Origin: Schmidtea polychroa
Taxonomy: Eukaryota
Reading direction: 5' to 3'
NCBI GenBank assembly: GCA_044892525.1
Contig: CM097888.1
Span: 36,580,001-36,644,000, forward strand
Length of the DNA: 64,000 bases
Positions within the stretch are counted from its first letter, which is position 1. Every line of letters begins with the position of its first letter. The notes under the pieces were generated by a model, which worked only from the letters and a program-made list of their open reading frames with translations, ran no database searches and was not told the origin of the DNA. The position numbers were made by a program, and so were the translations under genes. Below are positions 26,554-26,923 of the stretch, one piece after another.

Positions 26554-26923
26554 AAGTAATGGTGTAAAATATTTTTGTCGAATGTCTCACTTGAATAAAA
26601 TAAACAGTGCAAGCTTTGTGATACCCAGTGCAAATCCCAATAGTAGACTAGTTTCGAGCTTTTGGCTCTCATCAGTACTATGCAGGAGACACGAAAATTT
26701 CTCTTCGCGCCAGGTAAGTATACAATATTGTTGATTCAACTATGAAGGTGATTATGATTTTTCATACGCCATGTTTACAAGTTTACAGATTTTTTCTGTG
26801 ACCAAGCTATTTTGCAAGCGATGTGATTTCCAGTGTAGCGGGGAAAGTATGCAATAGAGTTGAATCAACAATATTGTATACTTACCTGGCGCGAAAAGAA
26901 ATCTTCGTGTCTCCTGCATAGTA
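26554..26923 (-). mobile_element. 370-bp hammerhead-containing non-autonomous insertion (retrozyme/PLE-derived-like), copy 1
   Basis: Flanked by CATTTGTTTATA (26542-26553) and CATTTTTTTATA (26924-26935). A single-copy empty site is at 46550-46561. Contains a hammerhead and a 67-bp inverted repeat (26675-26741 / 26858-26924). Confidence 0.75.
26640..26681 (-). ncRNA. Minimal type I hammerhead ribozyme
   Basis: ATAGTA-CTGATGA-GAGC-CAAAA-GCTC-GAAA-CTAG-TC^TACTAT: canonical core, 6-bp stem I, 4-bp stem II, palindromic ACTAGT stem III. Predicted cleavage between 26646 and 26645. Confidence 0.9.

What the first reader, a model, noticed from the sequence alone, without database searches (positions are those of the whole stretch)
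26554..26923. 370-bp hammerhead-ribozyme insertion with a 12-bp flanking duplication and an empty paralogous site
Seen: the minus strand has a canonical type I hammerhead (ATAGTA-CUGAUGA-GAGC/GCUC-GAAA-CUAG-UC^UACUAU). The unit has no ORF, is bounded by CATTTGTTTATA repeats (perfect in the copy at 40980-41349), and is cleanly absent at 46550-46561. Known: minimal hammerheads with a palindromic stem III occur in PLEs and retrozymes and are thought to work as dimers, and long variable TSDs fit target-primed retrotransposition. Inference: a small non-autonomous ribozyme retroelement possibly mobilised by a PLE RT, whose sequence differs from the neighbouring PLE pLTR.
Basis: partly seen in the sequence, partly recalled or inferred. 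Interest (0 to 1): 0.85.

Follow-up and report, generated by a model that had tools for sequence, protein, structure and literature searches.

The report
Fossil hammerhead-ribozyme retroelement insertion
A 370-bp non-coding insertion carrying a self-cleaving hammerhead ribozyme motif landed once in this AT-rich animal-like genome, with the footprints of a Penelope-type retrotransposon insertion, and was later copied along with its surroundings; it is a clean example of a known kind, not a new one.

Summary
An insertion of 370 bp (26554-26923, 98% copy at 40980-41349) is flanked by a 12-bp duplication and is exactly absent at 46550-46561. Its minus strand carries a complete type I hammerhead, which is rare by chance (about 0.003-0.01 expected per window). 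The two copies are not independent. They differ as much as their flanks do (2.1% against 2.65%), so there was one insertion followed by a segmental duplication. The 5' 66 nt of the element are an inverted copy of the 66 nt just upstream of the ribozyme core. The neighbouring Penelope-like element (PLE) has the same feature, an 84-bp inverted internal fragment at its 5' end. A related PLE from a public contig has a 262-nt one plus a 13-bp duplication. This supports PLE-style target-primed integration. The hammerhead is of the canonical metazoan kind found in retrozymes, not the minimal kind carried by relatives of the neighbouring PLE. That PLE shows no hammerhead and no similarity to the element. 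I found no further copies, so a family is unproven, and a retrozyme-like monomer cannot be separated from a 5'-truncated PLE of another family. As inserted, the copy is probably inert. It is a new member of a known kind, of moderate-to-low interest.

The parts
26542..26553 (.). left copy of the 12-bp target-site duplication (CATTTGTTTATA)
26554..26923 (-). inserted element, copy A, 370 bp; the sense strand is the minus strand; no ORF; GC 37%
26858..26923 (-). 5' inverted arm (66 nt): reverse complement of 26676-26741. Read as a by-product of integration. Its outer end coincides with the element's 5' end, with 1 nt of overlap with the duplication
26742..26857 (-). central 116 nt: start of the direct, presumably 5'-truncated part; no similarity to anything searched
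26676..26741 (-). native arm (66 nt) directly upstream of the ribozyme core; its last nucleotides are the 5' strand of helix I
26640..26681 (-). type I hammerhead: helix I 6 bp, CUGAUGA, helix II 4 bp with 5-nt loop, GAAA, palindromic CUAG, UC; predicted cut between 26646 and 26645
26554..26645 (-). 92-nt 3' tail after the predicted cleavage site; no poly(A); no similarity to the 3' end of the neighbouring PLE
26924..26935 (.). right copy of the target-site duplication (11 of 12 match)
40968..41361 (-). copy C: element 40980-41349 with perfect 12-bp duplications on both sides. It differs from copy A at 8 positions, one of them in the helix III palindrome, which is intact only in copy A
46550..46561 (.). 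empty paralogous site in cassette D: a single CATTTGTTTATA
47560..50786 (-). comparator: neighbouring Penelope-like element. One unit runs 50786->47741, followed by a partial tandem repeat (pLTR 47740-47560 = 50786-50606) that runs into an N stretch. No hammerhead found
48047..50618 (-). PLE coding region (RVT_1 and GIY-YIG). The two parts lie in two overlapping frames, one change of frame; relatives have a single ORF of about 850 aa
50790..50873 (-). 84-bp inverted internal fragment of the PLE (reverse complement of 48459-48542, 97.6%) abutting the PLE's 5' end; the same architecture as the element's 66-nt arm

Best explanation
This is one old retrotransposition event of the Penelope (PLE) style. 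An RNA carrying a canonical metazoan type I hammerhead was copied into DNA at a staggered break, which gives the 12-bp duplication. Only the 3'-terminal ~304 nt were copied in the direct orientation (26857->26554). A 66-nt internal piece was added in inverted orientation at the 5' end, the by-product typical of PLE integration. The cassette holding the insertion was later duplicated, giving copies A and C; cassette D split off earlier and kept the empty site. The source RNA was either a retrozyme-like non-autonomous element or a hammerhead-bearing PLE of a family other than the neighbouring one. In the source RNA the hammerhead would act as a dimer between two units to cut unit-length RNA. The copies here are single units whose helix I strand is locked in a 66-bp hairpin, so they are most likely inert fossils. 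Shown: the insertion, its duplication, the empty site, the motif, the inverted arm, the parallel with PLEs, and the single event. Inferred: the enzyme that made it, the nature of the source, dimeric cleavage, and inertness.
For: The filled/empty comparison is exact, with a 12-bp duplication. The hammerhead is complete and rare by chance. There was one event: A-C divergence is 8/382 in the element and 28/1055 in the flanks, and informative flank sites are AC|D 32, AD|C 12, CD|A 15. The 66-bp inverted arm sits at the sense-strand 5' end, and the arms differ at only one position shared by both copies, so it was essentially perfect when A and C split. The same 5' inverted internal fragment is found in the neighbouring PLE (84 bp), in the related PLE L004 (262 nt, 100%, with a 13-bp duplication around the whole insertion) and in L005 (1419 bp). 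This architecture is described as typical of PLEs in PMC8557442. The 3' end has no poly(A). Composition is foreign to the flanks. Helix III is one base pair closing a palindromic tetraloop, the dimer-dependent form described in PMC4209133 and PMC7229834. A hairpin of -141.9 kcal/mol (z = -14.7) includes the helix I strand.
Against: Only one insertion event is available, and no copy was found elsewhere. However, the source genome is not in the searchable collections. There is no sequence similarity to the neighbouring PLE, including its 3' end. That PLE has no hammerhead. Hammerheads of its relatives are of a different, minimal type. 5' inversions and 12-bp duplications can also arise with LINE-type enzymes (own knowledge). 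Since the A/C split, 1 of the 8 differences falls in the 42-nt motif against 0.9 expected, so there is no sign of constraint.
Confidence: 0.6

Rival explanations
1. It is a monomeric offspring of a true non-LTR retrozyme: a tandem-repeat, circular-RNA-forming, non-autonomous family. This is a sub-case of the best explanation and names the source.
For: Canonical type I hammerhead (helix I 6 bp with an internal loop and further pairs, helix II 4 bp, weak palindromic helix III), 370 bp, GC 37%, no ORF, duplication longer than 4 bp. All match the description in PMC7229834. Rfam's type I model HH9 matches it, while the PLE relatives' motifs match no Rfam hammerhead. Monomer derivatives are reported in 10.64898/2026.07.22.740005.
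Against: No tandem arrangement, no second unit, no other copy, and no expression data. The ends of the direct part do not overlap, so a circular or multimeric template cannot be shown.
Confidence: 0.4
2. It is a severely 5'-truncated copy (3' UTR or pLTR only) of an autonomous hammerhead-bearing PLE family that is not present in this window.
For: Most genomic PLE hammerheads occur as single motifs attributed to truncated PLEs (PMC4209133). PLEs show strong 5' truncation (PMC8557442). In relatives the hammerhead lies about 90-240 nt after the ORF and about 140 nt from the 3' end, a scale similar to the 92 nt here.
Against: No coding remnant in the 304-nt direct part. The hammerhead type differs from that of the one PLE clade sampled.
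Confidence: 0.35
3. The filled state is ancestral, and cassette D lost the element by recombination between the two 12-bp repeats.
For: Cassette B is truncated 58 bp before the site, so only one empty paralogue exists. Exchange among cassettes is visible: the site patterns conflict in the left flank.
Against: It needs two events instead of one on the tree ((A,C),D). It does not change what the element is, because the 12-bp repeats would still be its insertion duplication.
Confidence: 0.12
4. The insertion was made by a LINE-type enzyme through twin priming, or by repair of a double-strand break that captured a cDNA or a DNA fragment, with no PLE involved.
For: 5' inversions and 10-20-bp duplications are known for LINE insertions (own knowledge). 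There is no similarity to the local PLE.
Against: No poly(A) or simple-repeat tail. No LINE RT in the window. The inverted piece is a duplicate of an internal segment, exactly as in three PLE insertions examined.
Confidence: 0.15
5. The hammerhead-like motif is a chance match within an unrelated insertion.
For: The Rfam score is below the gathering threshold (24.4 against 52). There is no constraint between copies.
Against: All core nucleotides plus three correctly placed helices are present. Expectation is 0.003-0.01 per 64 kb on both strands, and the motif sits inside a 370-bp discrete insertion.
Confidence: 0.03

Closest known systems
Metazoan non-LTR retrozymes (Cervera and de la Pena 2020, PMC7229834), including newt/axolotl satellite-type repeats of about 330-350 bp
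   Same: Canonical type I hammerhead with helix I 6 bp and helix II 4 bp. Helix III reduced to one pair closing a palindromic tetraloop, as in axolotl HHR_Amex1. Size 170-400 nt, low GC, no ORF, duplications longer than 4 bp, and co-occurrence with PLEs.
   Different: Here there is a single unit, not a tandem array. It has a 66-bp perfect inverted arm at the 5' end. No evidence of other copies, of transcription or of circular RNA.
Hammerheads in the pseudo-LTRs of Penelope-like elements (Cervera and de la Pena 2014, PMC4209133; Craig et al. 2021, PMC8557442)
   Same: Palindromic dimer-type helix III. Position near a 3' end. Insertion architecture of 5' truncation, an inverted fragment at the 5' end, and a 12-13-bp duplication, shared with the window's PLE and with L004.
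   Different: No RT/GIY-YIG ORF and no pLTR. Helix I and II have canonical sizes, whereas the relatives of the local PLE have helix I of 3-4 bp and a 2-nt palindrome. No sequence similarity to the local PLE.
Schistosoma Sm-alpha SINE-like repeats with hammerheads (cited in PMC4209133)
   Same: A short (~0.3 kb) dispersed non-coding retroposon carrying a canonical type I hammerhead.
   Different: No tRNA-like part was detected here. Copy number is unknown. Membership was not tested by sequence, because no comparator was fetched.
Amniote intronic hammerhead HH9 (Rfam RF02275)
   Same: Best Rfam match. The core and the helix II loop are alike.
   Different: The score is far below threshold, helix III is deleted to a tetraloop, and the context differs (an insertion with a duplication, not a conserved intronic motif).

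Membership tests
Hammerhead ribozyme, type I | Core CUGANGA ... GAAA ... UH with G10.1-C11.1 closing helix II | tested here: met
   all core positions are present in both copies
Hammerhead ribozyme, type I | Three helices in type I topology (helix I open) | tested here: met
   Helix I is 6 bp plus an internal loop and further pairs; helix II is 4 bp. Helix III is only A-U closing a palindromic tetraloop, and extends to 6 bp only between two molecules
Hammerhead ribozyme, type I | Score at or above the Rfam gathering threshold for a hammerhead model | tested here: not met
   HH9 scores 24.4 bits against 52. The shortfall is due mainly to the missing helix III
Hammerhead ribozyme, type I | Self-cleavage at the predicted site | not testable with these tools
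   no RNA data available
Metazoan non-LTR retrozyme | Canonical type I hammerhead in a non-coding unit of about 150-450 bp with low GC | tested here: met
   370 bp, GC 37%, no ORF above 50 aa
Metazoan non-LTR retrozyme | Tandem arrangement of two or more units | tested here: not met
   A single unit at each site and no other copy in 64 kb. Monomer derivatives are known, however
Metazoan non-LTR retrozyme | Multi-copy family dispersed in the genome | tested here: inconclusive
   Nothing was found in the collections, but the source genome is not in them
Metazoan non-LTR retrozyme | Expression as linear and circular RNA | not testable with these tools
   no transcriptome available
Penelope-like element (autonomous) | ORF with RT and GIY-YIG endonuclease | tested here: not met
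   no ORF and no coding remnant
Penelope-like element (insertion footprint) | 5' truncation with an inverted fragment abutting the 5' end | tested here: met
   66-nt arm. Parallels: window PLE 84 bp, L004 262 nt, L005 1419 bp; described in PMC8557442
Penelope-like element (insertion footprint) | Target-site duplication of about a dozen bp | tested here: met
   12 bp here and 13 bp in L004. This rests on only one comparator
Penelope-like element (insertion footprint) | Partial tandem (pLTR) | tested here: not met
   no direct repeat within or around the element
Non-autonomous partner of the neighbouring PLE | Sequence similarity to the autonomous element, at least at the 3' end | tested here: not met
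   No blastn match at word size 7. The 3'-end local alignment is no better than shuffles, with 62% of shuffles scoring at least as high
SINE (tRNA-derived) | tRNA-like 5' part | tested here: not met
   ARAGORN finds nothing in 26000-27500, and there are no Rfam tRNA/7SL/5S matches
DNA transposon / MITE | Terminal inverted repeats at both ends | tested here: not met
   The inner arm lies 122 bp from the left end. By contrast, a true MITE sits at 41825-42241

The most novel reading that the evidence does not exclude
The 66-bp hairpin is not an integration by-product but a native module of an undescribed single-unit ribozyme retroelement. The hairpin arms carry a perfect 5' splice-site consensus, found nowhere else in the window. 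The hammerhead's helix I strand ends in an acceptor-like AG. Splicing or hairpin opening would then switch the ribozyme between an off and an on form, echoing the spliced/unspliced hammerheads of Drosophila virilis Penelope (PMC4209133). Such an element would be mobilised in trans by a hammerhead-less PLE.
Probability: 0.08. Interest if true: 0.7.

Novelty: new member of a known kind. Interest (0 to 1): 0.35.

Why it matters
Which enzyme moves animal retrozyme-like hammerhead elements is still stated as open: 'LINEs or PLEs among others' in PMC7229834, and a sequence-based argument for PLEs in the 2026 preprint 10.64898/2026.07.22.740005. This locus offers insertion-level evidence. It has an exact filled/empty pair and a 12-bp duplication. 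It also has the same 5' inverted-fragment footprint as two PLE insertions of the clade present next door. If a genome-wide census confirmed the pattern, it would tie canonical type I hammerhead elements to PLE-style integration even without sequence similarity to the PLE. For the host, the copy is most likely an inert fossil about 2.5 kb upstream of a sulfite-oxidase-like gene.

Tried and rejected
1. Other copies. I tried blastn of the element against the window and exact-pattern scans of viral, metagenome and prokaryote genome collections with the 25-nt core and a 31-nt arm. I also tried protein searches with the element's longest ORFs as a proxy for copies in public assemblies and a literature string search. 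Nothing relevant turned up. The one metagenome hit (L001) is an unrelated ~1-kb circular-looking contig with hammerheads on both strands.
2. Finding the source genome or an outgroup locus through host proteins gave nothing usable. The organism remains unidentified.
3. Independent insertions at the same site in A and C: rejected by equal divergence of element and flanks.
4. Derivation from the neighbouring PLE: rejected.
5. A hammerhead in the neighbouring PLE: none with strict or relaxed descriptors or with Rfam.
6. MITE, SINE or a U1-like gene: rejected.
7. A type III reading, in which the 66-bp hairpin is a closed helix I: rejected by inspection. The base before the arm is G and no helix III partner exists.
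8. Thermodynamic dimer prediction was uninformative for the non-canonical core.

Full report
OBSERVATION

- Element A spans 26554-26923 (370 bp). It lies between CATTTGTTTATA at 26542-26553 and an 11/12 copy at 26924-26935.
- Element C spans 40980-41349, with perfect 12-mers on both sides.
- Cassette D has one 12-mer at 46550-46561 and nothing between.
- A four-way alignment of the cassettes shows the gap is exact to the base.

On the minus strand, 26681->26640 reads as follows: a six-nucleotide helix I strand, CUGAUGA, a 4-bp helix II with a 5-nt loop, GAAA, the palindrome CUAG, UC, and the complementary helix I strand. The predicted cut lies between 26646 and 26645.

Evidence that the motif is real:
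- Rfam reports nothing at gathering thresholds.
- With E-value reporting, the only hammerhead hits in the window are these two sites. They match Hammerhead_HH9 at 24.4 and 22.0 bits (gathering 52), with E = 0.0016 for the local 901 nt and 0.11 for the whole window. The loss of score comes from the deleted helix III.
- A structural descriptor of my own finds only these two sites in 64 kb. In 300 dinucleotide-preserving shuffles it finds 0.003 per window (helix I >=6 bp, helix II >=4 bp) or 0.01 (>=5, >=3).

The element is 37% G+C in flanks of 24%. It has no ORF longer than 50 aa inside it, and those ORFs have no homologue among billions of predicted proteins.

ONE EVENT, NOT TWO

The window between about 23.9 and 47.3 kb is a set of four paralogous cassettes (A 23931-27566, B 32475-34112, C 38464-42536, D 44904-47328). 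Each holds the upstream region and the first part of a Cyt-b5 exon of a sulfite-oxidase-like gene. The cassettes are interleaved with two copies of a RING-finger ORF and with PLE pieces.
- A and C differ at 8 of 382 aligned positions in the element plus duplication (2.1%), and at 28 of 1055 in the flanks (2.65%).
- A-D and C-D differ by 4.7% and 4.3%.
- Informative flank sites group A with C 32 times, against 12 and 15 for the alternatives.

The element was therefore present before A and C were duplicated, and D is the outgroup with the empty site. B is truncated 58 bp before the site and is uninformative.

One of the 8 differences lies in the 42-nt hammerhead, in the helix III palindrome, which is intact only in A. 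About 0.9 would be expected, so there is no sign of constraint since the duplication.

The first 66 nt of the sense (minus) strand, 26923->26858, are the reverse complement of 26741->26676. That stretch is the 66 nt ending exactly where CUGAUGA begins.
- The arms differ at one position shared by A and C, plus one private to A. The repeat was therefore essentially perfect when A and C split.
- The outer arm ends at the element boundary, with one nucleotide shared with the duplication.
- Folded as RNA, the element forms a 66-bp hairpin (-141.9 kcal/mol, z = -14.7). This hairpin includes the 5' strand of helix I.
- The isolated 71-nt motif, by contrast, forms helix I and helix II.

The layout, 5' to 3' on the minus strand, is: inverted arm 66 nt, central 116 nt, native arm 66 nt, ribozyme core 30 nt, tail 92 nt. 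There is no poly(A).

THE PLE PARALLEL

The neighbouring element is a PLE on the minus strand, with coding region 48047-50618. It has RVT_1 and GIY-YIG domains, and its best database relatives are 40-49% identical PLE proteins of about 850 aa. Here, and in the partial copy at 42751-44173, the RT and endonuclease parts lie in two overlapping frames: one change of frame each. I cannot say whether that is damage or design.

One unit runs 50786->47741 and is followed by a partial tandem repeat (47740-47560 = 50786-50606) that runs into an N stretch. I did not try to fill any N stretch.

Directly upstream of the unit, 50873->50790 is an inverted copy (97.6%) of an internal 84-bp piece of the same element, 48459-48542. 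That is the same architecture as the 66-nt arm of the hammerhead element.

I then fetched relatives of this PLE from public contigs.
- In L004 the whole insertion is bounded by a 13-bp duplication (5597-5609 and 8462-8474). It starts with a 262-nt inverted internal fragment (5610-5871, 100% complementary to 8161-8422) abutting the 5' pLTR.
- L005 has a 1419-bp inverted copy head to head.

Craig et al. describe exactly these features as typical of PLEs: 5' truncation, partial tandems, and an inverted 5'-truncated copy at the 5' end (PMC8557442).

WHAT KIND OF HAMMERHEAD

Cervera and de la Pena define two kinds (PMC4209133).
- The canonical metazoan type I motif has helix I of 6 bp, helix II of 4 bp, and helix III of 1-2 bp capped by a 2-4-nt palindromic loop. 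It works as a dimer.
- The PLE 'min-HHR' has a longer helix II, a shorter helix I and no helix III.

The motif here is of the first kind. [quoted passage not shown]

The relatives of the local PLE do carry hammerheads, 90-240 nt after the ORF (L002, L004 twice, L006, and the inverted copy in L005). These have helix I of 3-4 bp and a 2-nt palindrome, and no Rfam hammerhead model matches them even at E <= 10.

The local PLE itself shows no hammerhead with strict or relaxed descriptors or with Rfam. The element has no similarity to it anywhere, including the 3' end, and no PLE coding remnant.

MECHANISM (best reading, confidence about 0.6)

Shown: a discrete foreign insertion with a 12-bp duplication, a complete type I hammerhead, a 5' inverted internal fragment, a single event followed by duplication, and the same footprint in PLE insertions.

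Inferred:
- An RNA bearing the hammerhead was reverse-transcribed at a staggered break by a PLE-type RT/endonuclease.
- The direct copy stopped 304 nt from the 3' end.
- A second priming or template switch added the inverted 66 nt.
- In the source, two hammerheads pair through the ACUAGU palindrome to cut multimeric RNA, as described for retrozymes and PLEs.
- The copies here, being single and hairpin-locked, do not cleave themselves efficiently.

The source is either a retrozyme-like non-autonomous element (about 0.4) or another PLE family's 3' end (about 0.35). The data cannot separate the two.

RIVALS
- Deletion in D rather than insertion in A/C (0.12). This does not change the nature of the element.
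- LINE-type twin priming or break repair (0.15). There is no tail and no LINE in the window, but it is not excluded.
- Chance motif (0.03).

LIMITS

I found no other copy in any collection. The source genome appears not to be in the protein or contig collections, so 'no copies elsewhere' is untested rather than shown. The organism is unidentified.

COMPARISON AND NOVELTY

Everything here fits known kinds: metazoan non-LTR retrozymes and PLE-associated hammerheads.
- It fails the tandem-array feature of retrozymes and the ORF and pLTR features of PLEs.
- It is best filed as a monomeric or truncated derivative, a new member of a known kind.
- Its value is as a clean filled/empty example whose footprint links a canonical type I hammerhead element to PLE-style integration. 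That question is still phrased as open in PMC7229834 and is argued from sequence similarity in the 2026 preprint.

SLIP

The idea was checked only with Rfam (no U1 match) and with an 11-mer taken from the window.

Noticed in passing
window 26711-26721 (+), 26878-26888 (-), 41137-41147 (+), 41304-41314 (-): The inverted-repeat arms contain CAGGTAAGTAT, a perfect extended 5' splice-site consensus (own knowledge of the consensus). It occurs nowhere else in the window: 4 hits against 0.04 expected. On the hammerhead strand the donor sits in the inverted 5' arm, and helix I's 5' strand ends in a pyrimidine-rich ...AG. PLEs are known to keep introns next to the hammerhead (PMC4209133). Unexplained.
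   Followed up: partly
window 47560-50873: The neighbouring C-terminal-endonuclease PLE has no recognisable hammerhead in a fully visible unit, although relatives at 40-49% protein identity have one after the ORF. Its RT and GIY-YIG parts lie in two overlapping frames in both copies present.
   Followed up: partly
window 27573-27889, 42595-42750, 47329-47559, 57838-58004: All four N stretches sit at junctions between the cassette end and PLE pieces or the sequence that follows them. This is consistent with assembly trouble at PLE tandem/inverted junctions. I did not fill them.
   Followed up: no
window 41825-42241: A 417-bp MITE-like insertion is present only in cassette C. It has ~17-bp terminal inverted repeats and an 8-bp duplication (AACTAGAT), as in hAT-type elements. 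It is a second filled/empty polymorphism among the cassettes.
   Followed up: partly
window 23931-47328: Four paralogous cassettes hold the upstream region and first part of the Cyt-b5 exon of a sulfite-oxidase-like gene (Cyt-b5 exon 23739-24077, Moco exon 10879-11361, minus strand). They are interleaved with two RING-finger ORFs (29681-31036, 35442-37016). Conflicting site patterns suggest exchange among the cassettes.
   Followed up: partly
window 36320-36594: A 12-bp-period tandem repeat lies inside the second RING-finger ORF. It accounts for much of the length difference between the two ORF copies (524 against 451 aa).
   Followed up: no
L001 (metagenome contig Ga0210346_104523), 1-1141: The contig's first ~123 nt recur at its end, so it looks like a circle of ~1018 nt. 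It has a type III hammerhead on one strand (40.2 bits, E 5.5e-07) and a type I-like one on the other, plus a 214-aa ORF. This is a viroid-like or obelisk-like agent that merely shares the 25-nt core string with the element.
   Followed up: partly
L005 3490-3520 and 6740-6780; L004 5873: In PLE relatives, repeat boundaries and a small local duplication fall inside or at the edge of the hammerhead. Here likewise the inverted arm ends exactly at CUGAUGA. The ribozyme region may be a preferred point for template switching.
   Followed up: no
window 22656-22736: A hairpin matches the mir-753 family below threshold (37.7 bits, gathering 62). It may simply be a palindromic repeat.
   Followed up: no
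window 62047-62472 and 14587-16321: Fragments of DNA-transposon genes: a piggyBac-type DDE_Tnp_1_7 domain, and ORFs with zf-C2H2_12 and a weak DUF4371 match.
   Followed up: no
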